In this document: positions 50,341-64,000 of the stretch, in pieces
Layout of the letters: every line of letters begins with the position of its first letter
Position numbering within the stretch: the first letter of the stretch is position 1
Assembly: GCA_051294905.1 (NCBI GenBank)
Contig: CM119377.1
Span: 8,680,001 to 8,744,000, forward strand
Reading direction: 5' to 3'
DNA from: Botryllus schlosseri
Lineage: Eukaryota
Length of the DNA stretch: 64,000 bases
Notes under the pieces: model-generated
What the model saw: the letters and a program-made list of their open reading frames with translations, nothing else
Told to the model about the DNA's origin: nothing
Database searches by the model: none
Translations under genes and position numbers: made by a program

Positions 50341-50918
50341 GAACACGTCTGTTGGACAATTCATACGCGATTGCAAGCACGTCATATGGAATATCAAAAT
50401 ATTGATCTCCAACTACGAGATAATGATCACTATACTTACGCTAGATGTCGATATAGCGACATGGTTACTACTAGGGAGTAGGGATAGCGTGAACCTCTGA
50501 AAGGTTCAGGTTGGTGTGAACGCGAACCTTTTTGAAAGGTTCTGTGTGAATGCGAACGTAAACCTCATGACTTCACATTGCTAATTCAAACCCTACATTT
50601 CAGTGAAGTGATAGCCTATATATTAATGCAGTTGTAGGCTACCGTTCACACCATCCCTACTATCACTTCACTGAAACTTTGGGTTCGGAATTAGCATGAG
50701 GTTCACGTTCGCGTTCACACAGAACCTTTCAAAACGGTTCGCGTTCACACGAACCTGAACCTTTCAGAGTTTCACACCATCCCTAATAAACACATCCGTT
50801 GGACAATTCATACGCGATAGCAAGCACGCCCAATGGAATGTCAAAAATATTGATCTCCAATAGTTACTAGCTGATGCTCATTACTTACTAGATGTCGACA
50901 TAGCGATAGGGTTATTAC
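50341..50918 (+). repeat. About 130-bp diverged direct repeats (50341-50470 and 50788-50918) bracketing a foldback element
   Basis: Both contain gttggacaattcatacgcgat.gcaagcacg..atggaat.tcaaaa.attgatctccaa..ctagatgtcga.atagcga. Confidence 0.85.
50479..50785. mobile_element. Foldback derivative of the TAGGGATGGTGTGAAC hAT family
   Basis: The left arm (tagggatagcgtgaacctctgaaaggttcagg...) is inverted at the right; an extra internal terminus gttcacaccatcccta lies at about 50645-50661. Confidence 0.82.
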
Positions 50919-56335: not shown

Positions 56336-56869
56336 GCATCTAAAGCGAAAATGACCAAGAATATTACGAACTGGTGGATCCCGATAATTATCAAACAGCA
56401 GATATTTGCAATTTCTGATATGAACAGACAACTATTGCTGCAGCGATTTTATGATTCTTAGTCTGCTCCGATTGTTAGCGGATAGTTGGCGATACCTTTT
56501 CCAGTGCGACGTTGAATGTAATAATTATTAACTGATTTCCACATATTTATAGATTTTGTCTCTTCAAACTCGCCTGCGGTACGCGTCCCCCAAGGTTACT
56601 AAGACCACCTGAATTTTTATTTCAGGTATTCTCACAGACCGCAATCGCATCTTAGTTGCGCGAAATATCGCAGTGCGATATTGTTGTTTGAATATTATTT
56701 TGCAGCGATAAATCGTGTTCAACATATCTTTAATACATGTCAAATCACTGAACTTTATGCAAATAAACACGCTATAAAATGTAAAAATGTTAATAAAGAA
56801 AACAGAAGCTGCATATATTCAAGAGCACGGTAAGCCGCTTAGGGAATGTTATACTATGCCTATTCACTT

Positions 56870-58739
56870 TCATTCCGATAAATACTCGTATATACTGACT
56901 ATTATCAAAGAAATGACAGTGAGCGTTAATATACTTTGGCTTGTGTCACCCGTGACAGAGCTGGTTTCACAATCCATGTCTTCTTTTCCGAATTGTTCTT
57001 CAGCTGGACGACCGATGTTCCACACTTCAAACATCTTCCAAGTTCTTCGACAGTGATCCAAGCTCGTGTCAACGCATGTCTGCAATTCTCGCCACCTTTA
57101 CATATTTGTTCGAAATATTGTTATCATATTCCATATTAATTATCGGCTCATAGAAATCTTGAATAATATAGATTACCTGCAGTTGCCCGTGTCGTCTCGA
57201 GTGCTGTTCCAGTCGCGAATTTGTTTGAAGCACTCGTGGAATACGGTCGTCATACCGGATAGCTCGCAGTTTTCTATGTCCACTGTCAAACGAAAGTTGA
57301 CAATTTTGTTGTAAATGTTGCATGATTAGGCACCTCTTGCTATCATTTCGCTATTGCTAGTGTACATTGTTTTCGAGATGGCACCGCTGAGAAACATGGA
57401 CGTCAAACGTTTACTGTTTCACCCGTGATACCTTCCACACAATAACTGCGTACCCTTGATGCAAGTGATAGCGATTAGACCAGTTTCTAAGCCATCGGAA
57501 TCTTCATCAATTCATAGCATGTCACCACGAGCTTAATCACAAGTAATCCTGGTAAATGTTAAACATCCTATGAATAACCAAGTCTCTCGAATCTAGATTT
57601 AAAAATGAATAAGAGGTTATTTGAATGTAGTTTGATTGATGTAATTTGAAGTAACAGTAATTGAAGTTAACTGTGAATTATAGAAAATATATTTAATTAG
57701 GTATGGTTACAACTATACTCCGATGTCTTCTGCAGATTATAAATAGCAGCTAAGTAAATGACGTGGTGTAAATAAGTGGTTACAGTTGTTTACATGCGAG
57801 CTCGCTTGTCAAAACTGAAAAAATACCCAGTATATATACTAACTTGTACGCTGATGCTTGCATTCTCTATCTTCAACCGTGAAGAAAATATCATCGTTCG
57901 CGTTATGATTCCAATACGGCCAGTAACTCCAAACGCCATCAGCACAATTATCGGTTTGAACTCCTACACAGCCCTGTAAATGGATGTCGATTCATGCGGA
58001 TTCATGCTATTCCAGTCTCGATCAAATGTACTGAAATATTACAACTAGTGTTGCAGTTAAAATAATTGGTGTTTTGAAACACTTTGTTTAAACCAATGTT
58101 TTAAAAAAATGACATTTTAGAAAGATGATAATTGTTTTTTTCTTCAAAAGTTGTATAATTATGCAATGACTGTGTAAATACTTTCGCGAAAACATGCAAT
58201 ATGACGCCACGGACGATATCCGCAGTCGATATAGTCGACGTACACGATATGGAATGGTAGGGACTCTCGAAATCATCGTCGGTTCAACAGTTACAGCACG
58301 TAGATCATTGGTACGGAATGGATGTTCTGATGATGATGACCGCCTACTGCACAATGCTGCATTACAATGTAGATCTGGTTAAAGCTATTTTTGACCCGAT
58401 TAAGACATGGATCGGCAGCCTTTGTCAACAAAGGAGCCATATTTACCCTATATTCCTAATTGTCGATGCCATTACACTGTCACATCACAATTAGATTCGT
58501 GACGTCACATCTAATAAAACAAAACAAACGAACAATGAGAAACATGTTTTAAAGAAGCGCCATGTTTTCAATATGTTTGTTTTAAGTTGATTTTTGTTTT
58601 AAATGCAACCCTAATTACAACCCTACCTGGAACGCATGGTAACGGCAACGATAAATTTTGCTGTCCTCGTGTAGCGGGAATGTTCTGGATGGAATGACGC
58701 AGGCGTCAAATAGCTCCAGAGCTCGCTGCCTGCCGCAAT
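56870..58739 (-). CDS. Four exons encoding two six-Cys helical repeats and a GPI-signal-like C-terminus (3' module of the GH9 gene, or less likely a separate small gene)
   Basis: CGRQRALELFDACVIPSRTFPLHEDSKIYRCRYHAFQ/GCVGVQTDNCADGVWSYWPYWNHNANDDIFFTVEDRECKHQRT/MDIENCELSGMTTVFHECFKQIRDWNSTRDDTGNC/RWRELQTCVDTSLDHCRRTWKMFEVWNIGRPAEEQFGKEDMDCETSSVTGDTSQSILTLTVISLIIVSIYEYLSE*. Cys spacing is 11-17-7-7-27 and 11-16-7-7-26. The splice sites are good. Most of these exons are missed by the ORF track. Confidence 0.8.
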
Positions 58740-61700
58740 CTATCAAATTGGATATCGATAATCAGATATGATGGATATAGTATTTAGTAACAAATATTCA
58801 GGAATGTAACCTTGACAACTAATATATCAACGGCAAAATCGAATATTGACGTCAACTCGATTAGGAACGGATTAGGCCCATACTAACTGTATGTTGGTGT
58901 TAGTAGCTATTTGCAACCAGCTGACTACTAGGGATGGTGTGAACCTCTGAAAGGTTCAGGTTCGTGTGAACGCGAACCTTTTTGAAAGGTTCTGTGTGAA
59001 CGCGAACGTGAACCTCATGACGTCACGTGACGTCATATTGCTAATTCCAACCCTATCTTTCAATGAATTGATAGCCTATATTAATGTACACGATACCTAG
59101 CTACGACTCGGGCCACATGATGCCACAATGCTGGAGTACATATTGGCGTTTTAAACGACGCTAAATGTATCAACTGAGGCAATCAAAGGATATAATAATC
59201 CCATAAAATCAATATCTTCCGTCGCTTTGCCAACAATTTCGACGAGGACTTACCAGGGAATATAAGCTTACGCCTAAACGGTCCAGGCCAGACCGGACAA
59301 TGTATTCGGCGTCTGAGTATTGCTACATGGATATTGAGCAGAGTGTAAAACGGGTTTCTATACTTGCTACCGATATTACCCCATTAACAAGTTATACCGC
59401 AATAGCCAACACCTCAATCGCACGGATTTGGTTTTATTGACGCAGTAAAGATATGAAGTCAAGACTGACGCCGTACGCCAGCTAGATTTTGTACATCAGA
59501 AACGATATCAATCTCATTAATTGGTTGAATAAGCATCATTCGCTGACTACTAATTTTGCTCGTGATGTTGTGTGATTGCGGGTCAAGCTCACAGCAGAGA
59601 GTCACTAAATATTCACAAACGGAAAGCTGGATATTTCGAGCAAACTTTTGTAAAAAAGCAAGGAAAACTTTTAAGATTGTAAAGGTGCGTGCTCGTTTAG
59701 TGTTGATTTTTAGTACTGCCAGCGCCATGCATAGAGTGGCCCGCAGTTGAGATGCAATAACTTTGAACCAAAGATGTTTTAATGACGTGGAAAATTGTAA
59801 TATATGAAAAAGGTTCACAGTGCAGAACCTGCCAAGGTTCTGCTGTGAACGCGAACCTTTAAATTTCCGAGGTTCACATACAGAACGCGAACGTGAACCT
59901 CACGTTCACACCATCCCTACTGACTACTATAGTTACAGTCAGTCATACAAACTATATATATCTTTCATAATTAAAATTATATATCTTTCAACGAACGATG
60001 TAACTGTGATCAACGTCACACTTTCGAAGACATCTCATTGGTAATAATTTGAGAAGAGCAAAAGACTAGGTGGATACTACTATATTCGGAGGCTATTTAA
60101 TAATATAGTAAGACGCGACAACAATCAAAATAAAATCCAAATCGCAACCGACTTACACCGCTTTTTCTCCCAGTCGTAGTTTGCATTATGCGCGCTGGTG
60201 GTACCATTTGATATCGTAAACGTTCCACTAGTAGTTGCAAGATACTTCCCCGTTGTCACTGCGGTCGAATATGACGGGATACTCGGGTACGTGCTACTAG
60301 AAGTGGTGTTAGTAGCAATGGAGCCGCTATCCGAAACAGTCTGATCAAAGTTATCGTGATGTACCGTAGATGCACGGGTGGGAATATCGGAATAATTAGT
60401 AGAGGCAGTTGAAACCACGGTAGAGAAAAAGGTAGTTTGATTGGAGCTTAGTGGAAGATCTTGTTCCACCACCTGTACCGTAACTGTCGTATTTGCTGTG
60501 GTCAAGTCTGTGATTGATTCAATCGAAGTAAAGGACGTGTCACTGACACTGGTTGTAGGCGATGGAGTTGTAGTTGATTGAATTGCAGCGGTTGAAGTTG
60601 TGGATTTTTTATTACCGCGGTTGCTCTTCGTAGGCTTCTTGTTCCTCTTGGATTTAGTTTTCGGTTTCGGCGTCGCGGGCGGAAAAATCTCCAAATACCG
60701 CAAACCTGCGACAGCACTTTGGAATGCGGCGTTGTAGGTCAAAGCGACTCTGTTGGATCGGGCGTTGGATCGGTCATCGACGTACTGATCTTTTTTGTCC
60801 GGTCCGCCAACGACAGCTCCGTACAGGGTGTGTGGATTATGCTCCTTTGAGTACAATGCTGTGAAGTTACACGGATGACTCGGTACCGACGGGCAGGAGC
60901 TTGCCCTATGGTACGGCTGTTTGGGCGGCATTGGTCCATATCCAACTACAAAGCTCCGTCCTCCTCCATCCCCTAGTATGTAATCGATTTGTTTCTTGGC
61001 GAACTTCCTATTCTCTTTAACTTTGATCCCAAGGTCCGCTGTCATGAGACATATCAGTGCTGCCCCAGATGCGTATTGAAGAGTTCCCCACTGAGGTCGG
61101 TATAAGAGTCCTTTAGGAGTGTAATCTCCATTTTTGATGATATTATCACAGAACTCTTTGGCTTGTGTTCGGTATTTATTCTTTTTCGTAATCTTTGCCA
61201 GTAGAACGTTAATTCCAGGCAGTTTATCGTCCCAATAAAAATCGCGAGAGGCGTAATTTTTCATACGGAATTGCTGGTACTTTGACGTGGCATCTCGTAA
61301 GTATTTGGTTTCATTTGTAGCCAAGTGGAGCCAAATACTTGACCAAACTAGCTCGTCCTTGTAGCCGTTGAAAGAAGGGTAGGATGGACCAGCATCGGGT
61401 ATAGATCTGAAAATCAGTAGTAATCATGTTCCAATGTGGCTATAATTGACTGATCCTACTCCTGGAACTAGAATGTACTCATAAGATTGGAATAGGATTT
61501 AAAATTCCCCTTTCGAAAATTATCTTAATGTCACAGTCTGAAAATCACATAAGGATGAGGGCGCAAATTTATACTAGACTATGCGGTATGCGCATATGCA
61601 AACTTCATATGTTTTAAATCACCATTTGGGGAGATATATCGGTGTGGAATTGTTCATATTTAAAATATACATGTATCAATAATTTAAAGTTTAAATCAGA

Positions 61701-63736
61701 GTTTAGAACAATGGCATTTTAGGCTATGATATAACGTAATCGCTTGACATAGTACTGTACATGACCAGAATTGAAATTCGCCATGCCTGATTATTGACAA
61801 CGTTTTATATATACCTGTGATAGAGTCCTCTATATTGATCTGCAAATTGGTATAACTCTTTTGCGTGTTTGATAAGTAGCTTGTAATACTTTTCATCTGT
61901 CGTCTTGAATACGATTGCTGCAGCAGACAGCGCTGCCGAAGTCTCGGCTGCAAGCTCTGTACCTGGAGAGATCTTTGTGATCTTGAAGGCAGGTCGGAAA
62001 TAAGTTATATCTTCTGGTCGCAGCCAATGGCTACGTTCAAGTGCACTGGAGCCAACCTGAGACGTACAAATACTTGGTTAAATTGATTGAATATTCCGTG
62101 ATATACAGTAATCAACAACTTCACCTGGCCATATAGTTCAAATTTTGAAGTGTGACACTTCATGAAGTATAAAGTAAACCACCGAAGCAACGATTTCAGT
62201 TGATCGTCTTCCCCTGCACCCTGATAGGATTCTCGGAAGTTAATCATTCCCCATGATAGCACCGTTGCTGTAAACGCCATTGGAAAATTGAATTTTATGT
62301 AGTCGGGTCCATCAAAAAATCCCCCGCTCAAGTCTACTCCGTCAGACGACTTGTCATCTACGCAGGCTGATCTTCTCCATGGTATTCGAGTGCTTGGTGG
62401 TAATCTACCAGATTTCTGTGCCTCGTAGAACATATTTGAAAATCGGAGGACTTGTCCATAATCTTGATGTTTATCGAACTTTGGTAGTATGGCTGGCATC
62501 AGCTCTCCGGGCTCGGGATCAGAAAATGTCTCCATAGCAACTTGAATTTGTAATACTCCGGCAGCAAGAGTTTGGAAACCGGCGTTGCAATAGACACTGA
62601 CGCGGTTGGAGGTGGATGTTCTATCGTCAATGTAGTTATCCCATACATCCGGTCCACTGACTAACGCTCCCGTCAACTCATTCGGATTGTCGGCATCTGC
62701 ATCCCGGTTAGTCCAAGAGCATCTCTGTGATAATTTCGGGCAGCTACTTGCCCTATGAAAGGGCCGCTTGGGCGAGTTCTTTCCATAACCGACGACGAAA
62801 CTCTGGCCCCCATCCCCTACACAACATAAAGCGAAACCATGTACAAAGGAATGTCGTTGTGGCAAAATAAGCTCGATAGCAATACCTCTATTATGAGTGC
62901 ATATTGCTCACCTAAAATGTAGTTGAGTTGTTGCTGGGAAAATTTCCTGTAGACATTCTTACGTAATCCAAGATTTGCGGCAAATAAGCAAATGAACGCC
63001 GAGTTGCTTGCAAGCGCGGTGGAATCCCGTTTCGAAATATACAGAAAACCCTTGTGCGTGTAATTGAAGCTACCTCCCACAAGCATCGAATCACAAAAAT
63101 CAAGCAACTGGAATCGAAATTCCGTCCTGTGTAAAATACAGGTTTATTGATGCATGTTTACAGTGAGGTATAATTACAATCACCACCAGTACATTATGTA
63201 GGCCTACCCCGACCTGTTTGTCATTTGTGCTAGCAGAGCAATCACAGCTACTTGCTTATCGTCCCAATCCAGATAATTCATCTTTTTTGACTGTTGGTGT
63301 TGTGCCAGCCGCCTTATTGATAAATCCAAATACTTCGTTTCCTTCGTCACCCCGTAAAGCCACCCAGCTGCCCACGCGATTTCATCAAAATATCCGGATG
63401 ACCTGAGCGGAAATAGAGACGTATGCTGTACTGTAGTTACAATACAACATATCGCCGGTGGTCGTTTTACTTGTATTTCGAAGTATTTATAGCGTCTTGG
63501 TATTTCCCGCGGTAACGATCGGCGAAGCGTAACAGGGAAATGGATTCATTCACAAGTTTTGCAGAATACACCGGATTTGTAGCACGCAAGGCGATTGAAG
63601 CTGCGGCAAGTGCGGCTGCCGATTCTGCTGCAACGTCCGAGCCTGGTCTACTCCTCGTTACTGCGTACGATGGACGAACTCCACGGATATCCTCGGGTCT
63701 CATCCAGCCAGTGTTGTCAGTCTTCTCGTCTGAGAC
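56870..63736 (-). CDS. Tandem GH9 (endoglucanase-like, probably non-catalytic) - polybasic linker - Ser/Thr stalk - 2x Cys-rich repeat - GPI-like tail protein; 5'-partial (1142 aa in window)
   Basis: Exons (minus strand): 63736-63471, 63402-63214, 63126-62912, 62816-62125, 62056-61815, 61406-60157, 58739-58627, 57973-57844, 57282-57177, 57095-56870. All GT-AG and phase-compatible, total 3429 nt, ending in TGA. The join 60157 to 58739 is inferred from a consensus GTAAGT donor and matching phase 1. Confidence 0.75.
58046..58613. mobile_element. hAT MITE in an intron of the GH9 gene (same family as 43970-44354)
   Basis: TIR tagtgttgca.ttaaaa / ttttaaatgcaacccta; perfect TSD attacaac. Confidence 0.88.
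58929..59919. mobile_element. 991-bp hAT element with gaacc/gttcac subterminal repeats, inside the intron between the stalk exon and the Cys-repeat exons
   Basis: Perfect TIR tagggatggtgtgaac / gttcacaccatcccta; perfect TSD ctgactac. Confidence 0.93.
60125..63736 (-). CDS. GH9 portion of the gene: C-terminal part of GH9 domain 1 plus complete GH9 domain 2 and mucin-like stalk (reads to a stop at 60125 if the 60157 donor is not used)
   Basis: GH9 motifs appear twice: W.RPED, PGSDVAAESAAALAAASI / PGTELAAETSAALSAAAI, DEIAWAA.WLY / DELVWSSIWLH, WDDK, YILGDGG.SFVVGYG, HRASSC, GA(L/V)V(S/G)GPD. The domain-2 N-terminus reads FYEAQKSGRLP..RIPWR..DLSGGFFDGPDYIKFNFPMAFTATVLSWG. Confidence 0.93.
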
Positions 63737-63947
63737 CTATTTCATAGACACTTTATCGAATACCAGCTTCCATTGATTGTAAGACTATACGCACTACCGG
63801 TACTCAGTTGAAGTGGCGAGTGGTTATGCAGGTAATAATCAAATTCACTGTATTTGTCGAGCAAGAACGAGCTATATGATGATATCTATGCCTGCGAATT
63901 GAGCATGTCATTCGTATCCGTGGTGTTTCGATTACAATGTTCTATGG

Positions 63948-64000
63948 CAGGGGTGGGCAAACTTTTCAGCTCGCGGGCCGCATTCAACATCTGAATCCAT
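63948..64000. mobile_element. Start of a hAT-type MITE (truncated by the window edge)
   Basis: caggggtgggcaaacttttc..gcgggccgca is a typical hAT/Charlie terminal sequence. Confidence 0.6.

What the first reader, a model, noticed from the sequence alone, without database searches (positions are those of the whole stretch)
56870..63736. Candidate GPI-anchored tandem pseudo-cellulase: GH9-GH9-basic linker-mucin stalk-2x Cys repeat-GPI
Seen in the sequence: ten phase-compatible exons give one reading frame. It links at least two GH9 domains, through a Lys/Arg patch and a roughly 140-aa Ser/Thr stalk, to two six-Cys repeats and a hydrophobic C-terminal tail. The ORF track hides this because the stalk exon reads past a GTAAGT donor at 60157 into a stop, and the last four exons sit behind two transposons. 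Established knowledge: animal GH9s are usually single-domain secreted digestive endoglucanases; tunicates are the animals that synthesise cellulose; in plants, membrane-bound GH9 (KORRIGAN) and GPI-anchored COBRA proteins assist cellulose microfibril formation. Inference: if this is a tunicate, the protein could be a cell-surface cellulose-binding or organising factor for tunic assembly or tunic-epidermis adhesion. I do not recognise this architecture from any described protein.
Basis: partly seen in the sequence, partly recalled or inferred. Interest (0 to 1): 0.92.

Follow-up and report, generated by a model that had tools for sequence, protein, structure and literature searches.

The report
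Surface-tethered dead tandem cellulase of ascidians
This is a real, expressed sea-squirt gene for a surface-tethered protein made of two cellulase-like domains that have lost their cutting residue but are still strongly conserved, which makes it a testable candidate helper for handling the animal's own cellulose coat.

Summary
RNA contigs from several runs confirm all ten minus-strand exons (63736-56870), including the 60157->58739 splice across a transposon-bearing intron. The frame gives 1142 aa, cut at the 5' end by the window edge.

The order is GH9-1, GH9-2, a Lys/Arg patch, a 142-aa stalk (45% Ser/Thr), two six-Cys repeats and a hydrophobic GPI-signal-like tail. Both GH9 domains carry Arg in place of the catalytic acid Glu. 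Even so, they evolve under strong constraint (dN/dS 0.09 against a sister species).

The gene belongs to an ascidian-only orthogroup: Ciona intestinalis LOC100180615, Phallusia mammillata A0A6F9DI08 and an unannotated genomic contig. These full-length orthologs add a signal peptide and an N-terminal CBM2-fold domain. In Ciona and Phallusia the second GH9 keeps its catalytic residues. In the window lineage both domains are dead.

The Cys repeat models as a disulfide-stapled three-helix bundle with no significant known relative. The neuritin resemblance is weak.

The function is inferred, not shown: a surface-anchored, non-cutting beta-glucan binder for tunic cellulose. Where the gene is expressed is unknown. 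The orthologs are database entries labelled "uncharacterized", and I found no paper on them. Two earlier notes of this scan cover parts of this same stretch.

The parts
56870..63736 (-). 3' part (ten exons, 1142 codons plus stop) of a spliced protein-coding gene. The 5' exons lie beyond the window end.
   Evidence: RNA contigs with GT..AG joints; open frame.
62539..63736 (-). GH9 domain 1, C-terminal ~70% (model aa 1-316; exons 63736-63471, 63402-63214, 63126-62912 and the start of 62816-62125). It is catalytically dead.
   Evidence: Pfam PF00759; hmmsearch domain 1-316; motif table.
62602..62604 (-). CGC codon, Arg295 of the model, at the position of the catalytic acid Glu412 of termite endoglucanase 1KS8 (GH9-1).
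   Evidence: hmmalign motif table; numbering check; codon position.
60686..62466 (-). GH9 domain 2, complete (model aa ~341-775; end of exon 62816-62125, exon 62056-61815, start of exon 61406-60157). DGPD keeps both Asp, but Glu->Arg and several other cleft residues are changed.
   Evidence: Pfam.
60749..60751 (-). AGA codon, Arg754 of the model, at the catalytic-acid position of GH9-2.
60602..60670 (-). Lys/Arg-rich patch (11 K/R in 26 aa). It is present in close relatives but absent in Ciona and Phallusia.
   Evidence: orthologue sequences.
60176..60601 (-). Ser/Thr-rich stalk, 142 aa, 45% S+T, 5 N-x-S/T sites. It is probably heavily O-glycosylated.
60155..60156 (-). GT of the GTAAGT donor that ends the stalk exon. 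The mechanical ORF reads through it to a stop at 60125.
   Evidence: joint 60157->58739 in X1 and X2.
57844..58739 (-). Six-Cys repeat 1 (exons 58739-58627 and 57973-57844; spacing C-x11-C-x17-C-x7-C-x7-C-x27-C).
   Evidence: three-helix-bundle model of the homologous Phallusia repeat, pLDDT 85.
56969..57282 (-). Six-Cys repeat 2 (exon 57282-57177 and the start of exon 57095-56873).
56873..56968 (-). C-terminal tail: small residues after the last Cys, a short polar spacer, a 15-residue hydrophobic stretch, then EYLSE. It looks like a GPI-attachment signal.
   Evidence: Hydropathy and four-species comparison.
58921..59927 (.). Non-autonomous hAT-like transposon in intron 6: 16-nt perfect TIRs at 58929-58944 and 59904-59919, flanked by an 8-bp duplication, CTGACTAC. 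It is a high-copy family.
   Evidence: very high contig depth and many loose ends.
58200..58615 (.). Second high-copy repeat, in intron 7 (approximate borders).
   Evidence: Depth rises from ~10 to 70-2000, and loose ends sit at 58613-58616.

Best explanation
The window holds the 3' three-quarters of a genuine, expressed ascidian gene. It is the ortholog of Ciona intestinalis LOC100180615 and Phallusia mammillata A0A6F9DI08.

The full-length orthologs read: signal peptide, CBM2-fold carbohydrate-binding domain, Ser/Thr linker, GH9 domain 1, GH9 domain 2, mucin-like Ser/Thr stalk, two disulfide-stapled three-helix-bundle repeats, GPI-signal-like hydrophobic tail.

In the window's lineage both GH9 domains have lost the catalytic acid (Glu->Arg) and several neighbouring cleft residues. 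Their sequences are nevertheless under strong purifying selection.

The most likely mechanism, which is inferred: the protein is exported, is anchored to the outer leaflet of the plasma membrane (probably by GPI), and is held away from the cell on a glycosylated stalk. It uses the two inactive GH9 clefts, plus the N-terminal CBM2 if present as in the orthologs, to grip beta-1,4-glucan chains without cutting them.

In a cellulose-making animal the obvious ligand is the tunic's own cellulose. The protein would then tether or order nascent microfibrils at the cell surface.

Shown here: gene structure, expression, domain order, loss of catalytic residues, selective constraint, ascidian-wide orthology.
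Inferred: GPI anchoring, glucan binding, tunic role.
For: - Splicing and transcription of all ten exons.
- Open 1142-codon frame.
- GH9 domains: E 1.8e-51 and 3.6e-56.
- Catalytic residues: Arg sits at the Glu412 position in both domains of the window, of the sister species and of the L003 species. Further changes occur in the DH, WGxLRH, HHR and DYNA motifs.
- Constraint: dN/dS 0.09 (dS 0.32) over 647 codons of the two dead domains, window against sister-species contig L001.
- Shared architecture: the 16-exon, 1490-aa model from L003 is 53% identical over the whole window model. Phallusia P0316 and Ciona P0315 align end to end, C-terminal module included.
- Phylogeny: window and L003 pair in both ascidian-only domain clades at 100% support. 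Tandem GH9 models in arthropods, molluscs and corals are within-species duplicates with intact motifs.
- CBM2: the ortholog N-termini match sea-urchin CBM2 repeats. The AlphaFold model (pLDDT 88.5) hits solved CBM2 structures 3ndy_E, 6qfs and 1exg at probability 1.0, TM 0.55-0.62.
- Tail: in four species the last Cys is followed by small residues, a short spacer and a 13-19-residue hydrophobic end, with no basic cytoplasmic tail.
- Strand: in stranded raw reads most first mates lie on the + strand over the 3' end, which fits a minus-strand RNA.
Against: - No expression site is known. Run and sample names are coded, and I found no paper on the Ciona or Phallusia orthologs.
- No binding or anchoring experiment exists, and no GPI or signal-peptide predictor was available.
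- The window copy ends with five polar residues (EYLSE) after the hydrophobic stretch, which is less typical of a GPI signal.
- The window's own N-terminus lies outside the window, so its signal peptide and CBM2 are inferred from orthologs.
- Two of the three aromatic residues aligned with conserved Trp positions of CBM2 are replaced in the ascidian copies. The CBM2-fold domain may therefore bind weakly or bind something else.
- Arg in both clefts, together with the basic patch, could point to an anionic ligand rather than cellulose.
- Animal GH9 proteins are usually digestive.
Confidence: 0.5

Rival explanations
1. It is a gut-surface protein. It would sit anchored on the brush border of the digestive tract, like many stalked, GPI-anchored digestive hydrolases. 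There it would bind, or in Ciona and Phallusia cut, dietary algal beta-glucans. It would have nothing to do with the tunic.
For: - The nearest characterised GH9 relatives are digestive endoglucanases of termites, molluscs and crustaceans, at about 50% identity.
- GH9-2 of the Ciona and Phallusia orthologs keeps DAGD and the catalytic Glu.
- CBM2-GH9 fusions are common in digestive enzymes of molluscs and sea urchins.
Against: - The window lineage has kept both domains catalytically dead under strong constraint, which is hard to reconcile with a digestive enzyme.
- The full architecture was found only in ascidians, the cellulose makers.
- No expression data point either way.
Confidence: 0.2
2. 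It is a surface lectin for a ligand other than cellulose. Candidates are a pattern-recognition receptor for microbial or algal glucans, or a binder of sulfated or acidic tunic glycans. The analogy is with catalytically dead GH16 (insect beta-glucan recognition proteins) and GH18 (chi-lectins) domains; that comparison comes from my own knowledge.
For: - Arg replaces the acid in both clefts using different codons, CGC and AGA.
- Arg recurs at the same site in GH9-2 of the second tunicate family, in Clavelina and Ciona.
- An adjacent Lys/Arg patch is present.
- An 'endoglucanase' transcript is injury-induced in the ascidian Polycarpa (PMC10087333). Which gene that is remains unknown.
Against: - The Lys/Arg patch is not conserved in Ciona or Phallusia.
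- The ortholog N-terminus has a CBM2 fold, a family typically binding cellulose or chitin.
- There is no direct evidence for any ligand.
Confidence: 0.15
3. The architecture is the same, but the C-terminus is a single-pass transmembrane anchor with a five-residue cytoplasmic stub, not a GPI signal.
For: The window tail has a 15-residue hydrophobic stretch followed by EYLSE. No GPI predictor was run.
Against: - 13-16 hydrophobic residues are short for a membrane span.
- There are no basic stop-transfer residues.
- Three orthologs end directly in the hydrophobic stretch, after a conserved Cys followed by small residues (SSA, NNAG). That is the classical omega-site layout.
Confidence: 0.2
4. It is a decaying former cellulase gene that is transcribed but has no function.
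For: The catalytic acid is lost in both domains, and transposons sit in two introns.
Against: - The 1142-codon frame is intact, with correct splicing in several independent runs.
- dN/dS is 0.09.
- The same dead-site residues are shared with a species only 53% identical.
- All 12 Cys are conserved in four species.
Confidence: 0.02

Closest known systems
Ciona intestinalis LOC100180615 (XP_078490552.1) and Phallusia mammillata A0A6F9DI08, both labelled 'uncharacterized protein'
   Same: Orthologs. They align end to end at 47-49% identity over the GH9 part. They share the domain order: signal peptide, CBM2-fold domain, Ser/Thr linker, dead GH9-1, GH9-2, Ser/Thr stalk, 12-Cys module, GPI-like tail.
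   Different: Their GH9-2 keeps DAGD and the catalytic Glu, so it may be an active endoglucanase. The window protein has Arg there. They also lack the Lys/Arg patch.
Animal secreted GH9 endoglucanases, e.g. Nasutitermes takasagoensis NtEgl (PDB 1KS8)
   Same: Same catalytic-domain fold family. 1KS8 is the best solved match (E 1.5e-68), at about 51% identity.
   Different: They are single-domain, soluble and catalytically active (Asp54, Asp57, Glu412). The window protein is tandem, tethered, and has Arg at position 412 in both domains.
   Same: A GH9 domain held at the plasma membrane of a cellulose-synthesising organism.
   Different: KORRIGAN has an N-terminal type II membrane anchor, one GH9 domain and catalytic activity. 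Here the anchor is C-terminal, there are two domains and neither has the acid. The tree shows no specific kinship: the ascidian domains group with animal GH9.
   Same: Predicted GPI anchor plus a carbohydrate-binding module, in a cellulose producer.
   Different: There is no sequence or fold relationship. The analogy is functional only.
Tunicate Gh6 / GH6-1 membrane cellulase (PMC10334666, PMC10986139)
   Same: A membrane-tethered cellulase-family protein of tunicates, proposed to act on tunic cellulose.
   Different: GH6 is a different fold, was acquired by horizontal transfer, has a transmembrane anchor and has documented epidermal expression. The GH9 gene here is of animal descent, and its expression is unknown.
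Second tunicate tandem-GH9 family (Ciona LOC100176349, Styela LOC120328443, Clavelina LOC143448311)
   Same: Signal peptide, two GH9 domains that both lack the catalytic Glu, and a GPI-signal-like tail.
   Different: These form separate, ancient domain clades. They have no CBM2-like N-terminus, no long stalk and no Cys module.
Neuritin (CPG15, Pfam NRN1)
   Same: A small GPI-anchored protein with six Cys in roughly similar spacing. It appears among weak feature and fold neighbours: atlas score 0.70, Foldseek TM 0.41.
   Different: There is no Pfam match at E up to 10. The Foldseek E-value is 7-9 and RAMP3 scores higher. Homology is not supported.

Membership tests
Glycoside hydrolase family 9 (fold and sequence family) | Significant match to Pfam PF00759 over the domain | tested here: met
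   E 1.8e-51, 3.6e-56 and 3.1e-17 on exon translations. There are two domains by hmmsearch.
Glycoside hydrolase family 9 (active enzyme) | Catalytic acid Glu (Glu412 of 1KS8) in the NEVA motif | tested here: not met
   Arg in both domains (NRVS, NRVA), in the window, the sister species and the L003 species.
Glycoside hydrolase family 9 (active enzyme) | Catalytic base pair Asp54/Asp57 (DAGD) | tested here: inconclusive
   GH9-2 has DGPD, with both Asp kept. The GH9-1 motif lies outside the window. In the L003, Phallusia and Ciona orthologs it reads IDGG or TDGG, with both Asp positions changed.
GPI-anchored proteins | C-terminal signal: small omega-site residues, short polar spacer, hydrophobic end without a cytoplasmic domain | tested here: inconclusive
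   The pattern is present and conserved in four species by inspection and hydropathy. No dedicated predictor was available, and the window copy has five polar residues after the hydrophobic stretch.
GPI-anchored proteins | N-terminal signal peptide | not testable with these tools
   The window's N-terminus lies outside the window. The L003, Phallusia and Ciona orthologs begin with a hydrophobic leader, but no predictor was run.
GPI-anchored proteins | Release by PI-PLC or a detected glycolipid anchor | not testable with these tools
   This needs an experiment.
CBM2 carbohydrate-binding module (in the orthogroup) | CBM2 sequence profile or fold | tested here: inconclusive
   - Pfam CBM_2 is below its cut-off (13.5 bits against 24) on L003 exon 1 and is absent on Phallusia and Ciona.
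- phmmer links the domain to sea-urchin CBM2 repeats.
- The AlphaFold model matches solved CBM2 structures at probability 1.0, TM 0.55-0.62.
- It cannot be tested for the window copy, whose 5' end is missing.
KORRIGAN-type membrane GH9 | N-terminal type II membrane anchor with a single active GH9 domain | tested here: not met
   The hydrophobic anchor is C-terminal, there are two domains, and both lack the acid.
Neuritin / NRN1 (PF15056) | Profile match or a significant fold match | tested here: not met
   - No Pfam hit at E up to 10.
- Foldseek to neuritin models gives TM 0.41, E 7-9.
- A PDB profile search found nothing.
Mucin-like stalk | Long low-complexity Ser/Thr-rich segment | tested here: met
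   142 aa with 45% Ser+Thr. Equivalent stalks occur in all orthologs.

The most novel reading that the evidence does not exclude
Tunicates may run their own counterpart of the plant KORRIGAN/COBRA system. It would be an ancient, ascidian-wide set of membrane-tethered tandem GH9 proteins working beside cellulose synthase at the epidermal surface. In one lineage both GH9 clefts were converted, in parallel and with different codons, from Glu to Arg. If so, gripping the glucan chain, rather than cutting it, would be the activity that microfibril assembly needs.
Probability: 0.25. Interest if true: 0.85.

Novelty: new variant of a known kind. Interest (0 to 1): 0.62.

Why it matters
How tunicates, the only cellulose-making animals, guide cellulose from the synthase into ordered tunic fibres is still largely open. 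So far only CesA and the horizontally acquired Gh6 gene have been studied.

This gene family comes from the animal's own GH9 stock. It is conserved across ascidian orders. It appears surface-tethered, and orthologs carry a CBM2-fold module. In at least one lineage it is kept under strong constraint after losing catalysis.

That gives a concrete candidate that can be knocked out: Ciona LOC100180615. It also offers a natural experiment, active versus dead second domain, on whether hydrolysis or binding matters. Finally, it adds GH9 to the glycosidase folds recycled as non-catalytic binders, and it defines an unclassified six-Cys three-helix-bundle repeat.

Tried and rejected
- Pfam on the four C-terminal exon pieces and on the contiguous Phallusia and Ciona modules gave nothing usable.
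- A PDB profile search with the repeat alignment gave nothing.
- Foldseek of the repeat model against Swiss-Prot models, PDB, AFDB clusters and the ESM Atlas returned only generic three-helix bundles. RAMP3 scored TM 0.48 and neuritin TM 0.41, all with E above 1. I therefore rejected neuritin or RGM kinship as unsupported.
- The language-model atlas gave only weak leads: DUF1397, DUF19, NRN1, CPG4, all at scores of 0.80 or less.
- A region-restricted homolog search with the Phallusia module returned only the query itself.
- Alignment A1, made of exon fragments, was unusable as a profile and was replaced by A2.
- Contig L002 from the sister-species run was first taken as the ortholog of the stalk exon. 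It shows saturated dS where L001 shows dS 0.3-0.4, so it is a second copy or paralog. I left it out of the dN/dS estimate.
- The spliced window protein has no reference, so it could not be handed to Pfam, structure prediction or the big protein searches. I used exon pieces and orthologs with protein ids instead.
- Literature searches for the gene ids, for GH9 in tunicates and for ascidian endoglucanases found no description of this family.
- The organism's name stayed coded. The tunicate origin rests on orthology and the domain tree.


Full report
**1. Gene structure and expression**

The region holds a minus-strand gene. The mechanical ORF list shows GH9-like translations at 63703-63467, 63350-63204, 63107-62817, 62865-62005 and 61324-60125. 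Pfam Glyco_hydro_9 matches them at E 3.1e-17 to 3.6e-56. One ORF contains the end of one GH9 domain and the start of another.

I laid Logan contigs of RNA runs and raw reads of a 2026 RNA-seq run on 56801-62800 and 60001-64000. This gave GT..AG joints for every intron:
- 63400/63469
- 63125/63213
- 62815/62911
- 62054/62123
- 61406/61815
- 58739/60157
- 57972/58626
- 57282/57844
- 57093/57175

Single contigs span many of these joints: X1 record 1 (2388 nt), X2 record 17 (3004 nt) and X6 record 18.

After resolving the 1-2 nt ambiguities to GT/AG, the ten exons join into one open frame of 1142 codons ending at 56872-56870. The ORF track misses this because the stalk exon reads through its GTAAGT donor to a stop at 60125.

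The X2 contig runs 538 nt further upstream than 63738. Its loose end translates in frame to the GH9 segment expected just before exon 1. So the gene starts beyond the window. One X3 contig keeps the 68-nt intron at 62055-62124.

**2. Anatomy of the window protein**

| Model residues | Feature |
|---|---|
| 1-316 | C-terminal ~70% of GH9 domain 1 |
| ~341-775 | Complete GH9 domain 2 |
| from 779 | Lys/Arg patch, 11 K/R in 26 aa |
| 804-945 | Stalk, 45% Ser+Thr |
| 953-1110 | 12 Cys in two repeats |
| 1111-1142 | Tail |

The repeat spacings are C-x11-C-x17-C-x7-C-x7-C-x27-C and C-x11-C-x16-C-x7-C-x7-C-x26-C. The tail has small residues, a polar spacer, a 15-residue hydrophobic stretch and EYLSE.

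Intron 6 carries a 991-bp element with perfect 16-nt inverted ends and an 8-bp target duplication. Intron 7 carries another high-copy repeat.

**3. Loss of catalysis**

I aligned all domains to a GH9 profile. The termite enzyme 1KS8 served as ruler: its Asp54, Asp57 and Glu412 numbering matches protein P0365.
- Both window domains have Arg at the Glu412 position. The codons are CGC at 62604-62602 and AGA at 60751-60749.
- Further replacements occur in the DH, WGxLRH, HHR and DYNA motifs.
- GH9-2 keeps both Asp, as DGPD.

**4. The domains are dead but constrained**

A genomic contig from another sample (L001) is 91-99% identical at the protein level per exon. Over 647 aligned codons covering both domains, dN is 0.030 and dS is 0.32, so dN/dS is 0.09.

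A second contig from the same run (L002, 82% identical) has saturated dS. I treated it as another copy and excluded it.

**5. Relatives and taxon**

*First searches.* An exhaustive representative search with the domain-junction exon found only a fragment close to the query. Everything else was at or below 51% identity. The top named hits were hemichordates, amphioxus, a sea urchin and molluscs. A word-indexed search with the GH9-2 half found L002's product, a 63%-identical product on a 9.7-kb genomic contig (L003), and then Ciona savignyi H2Z0W9.

*L003 model.* I built a 16-exon, 1490-aa model on L003 by enumerating GT/AG pairs that keep the frame and match the window protein. It is 53% identical to the window model over all 1142 residues. 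It supplies the missing N-terminus: a hydrophobic leader, a roughly 100-aa domain, a Ser/Thr linker and the start of GH9-1.

*Profile search for long proteins.* This search surfaced two full-length matches:
- Phallusia mammillata A0A6F9DI08, 1461 aa.
- A 1424-aa protein that the cluster look-up identifies as Ciona intestinalis LOC100180615.

Both align end to end with the L003 model. Among 416 collected proteins, they are the only ones that match the C-terminal Cys module, at E 1e-21 to 1e-30.

*Domain tree.* The tree shows four ascidian-only clades. Two belong to this family and two to a second tandem family (Ciona LOC100176349, Styela, Clavelina). In both clades of this family, window and L003 pair together at 100% support, sister to Phallusia plus Ciona. 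Tandem GH9 models in insects, crustaceans, molluscs and a coral are within-species duplicates with intact motifs.

I conclude that the window comes from an ascidian outside the Ciona/Phallusia group. The species name is coded, and I could not determine it.

**6. A twist on 'pseudo-cellulase'**

- GH9-1 is dead in all four species. DAGD has become IDGG or TDGG, and Glu has become Arg, Gly or Ser.
- GH9-2 is intact in Ciona, C. savignyi and Phallusia (DAGD, DH, HHR, Glu).
- In the window, its sister species and L003, GH9-2 has Arg there plus shared cleft changes.

The fully non-catalytic state is therefore derived. It is old, being shared by species only 53% identical, and it has been maintained.

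**7. N-terminal domain of the orthologs**

- Pfam CBM_2 is only a sub-threshold hit on L003 exon 1.
- The domain matches the three CBM2 repeats of Diadema GH9 proteins by phmmer.
- It aligns with conserved Trp and Gly-Trp positions.
- An AlphaFold model of the Phallusia domain (pLDDT 88.5) matches solved CBM2 structures at probability 1.0.
- Two of the three positions aligned with conserved Trp of the echinoderm and hemichordate repeats are replaced by Tyr, His or Asp in the ascidians. Binding strength is therefore uncertain.

**8. The Cys module**

All 12 Cys and a C-R-[YW]...C...C...W..W..WN pattern are conserved in four species. A single repeat models confidently (pLDDT 85, pTM 0.77) as a three-helix bundle.

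No library gave a significant match. The module is best described as an unclassified domain.

**9. Anchor**

In all four species the last Cys is followed by two to four small residues, a short spacer and a hydrophobic C-terminus, with no basic tail. The second tunicate tandem family ends in the same way.

This is the textbook layout of a GPI signal. I could not run a predictor, so a short transmembrane anchor remains possible.

**10. Function**

Nothing here shows where the gene is expressed or what it binds. The favoured reading is a surface-tethered, non-cutting beta-glucan binder acting on tunic cellulose. It rests on four points:
- restriction to the cellulose-making clade;
- a CBM2-fold module in the orthologs;
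- constraint on the dead clefts;
- the stalk-plus-anchor geometry.

The rivals are a gut-surface protein and a lectin for another glycan or for immune recognition. The literature I could search describes CesA and Gh6 as the cellulose-related genes studied in tunic formation (PMC10334666, PMC10986139). It mentions GH9 in animals only as a digestive family, and it has nothing on these loci. An 'endoglucanase' is listed among injury-induced genes in Polycarpa (PMC10087333), but which gene that is remains unknown.

**11. Verdict**

The structural interpretation is supported, with corrections: orthologs already exist as uncharacterized entries, the family is only partly pseudo-enzymatic, and it carries an extra CBM2-fold domain. 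The functional hypothesis is plausible and now sharply testable, but it is unproven.

Noticed in passing
window 63948-64000: An extremely high-copy repeat starts at the window's end. Summed contig depth there is ~339,000 in the DNA run X15, against ~70 nearby. It is also abundant in RNA runs, with many different flanks.
   Followed up: no
window 50479-50785 and 58929-59919: The same 16-nt terminal inverted repeat (TAGGGATGGTGTGAAC) occurs five times in the window, against 0.03 expected. This marks a hAT-like non-autonomous transposon family with 8-bp target duplications. Copies are embedded in many transcripts of this organism.
   Followed up: partly
window 62055-62124: One RNA contig (run X3) retains this 68-nt intron while the others splice it out. 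Retention would shift the frame between the two halves of GH9-2.
   Followed up: no
L002 (Logan SRR25569784 contig, 1870 nt): This is a second copy of the GH9-2/stalk exon in the sister-species sample: 82% protein identity with saturated synonymous divergence. It has the same Glu->Arg change and a basic patch. It is probably a paralog, so the family may have more than one member in this lineage.
   Followed up: partly
proteins P0330 (Ciona LOC100176349), P0326/P0421 (Styela LOC120328443), P0327 (Clavelina LOC143448311), P0328: This is a second, ancient ascidian family of tandem GH9 proteins. Both domains lack the catalytic Glu (Ser, Ala, Gly or Arg instead). They have a signal peptide and a GPI-signal-like tail, but no CBM2-like domain, long stalk or Cys module. 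All are annotated as uncharacterized.
   Followed up: partly
L003 389-1199: In the L003 species the gene lies just downstream of a presequence-protease-like gene (Pfam M16C_assoc). I did not examine synteny with the window.
   Followed up: no
window 60244-62589: There are many single-base differences between the RNA or DNA contigs and the reference, roughly 1-2 per 100 bases and mostly shared among runs. This fits a highly polymorphic marine invertebrate.
   Followed up: no
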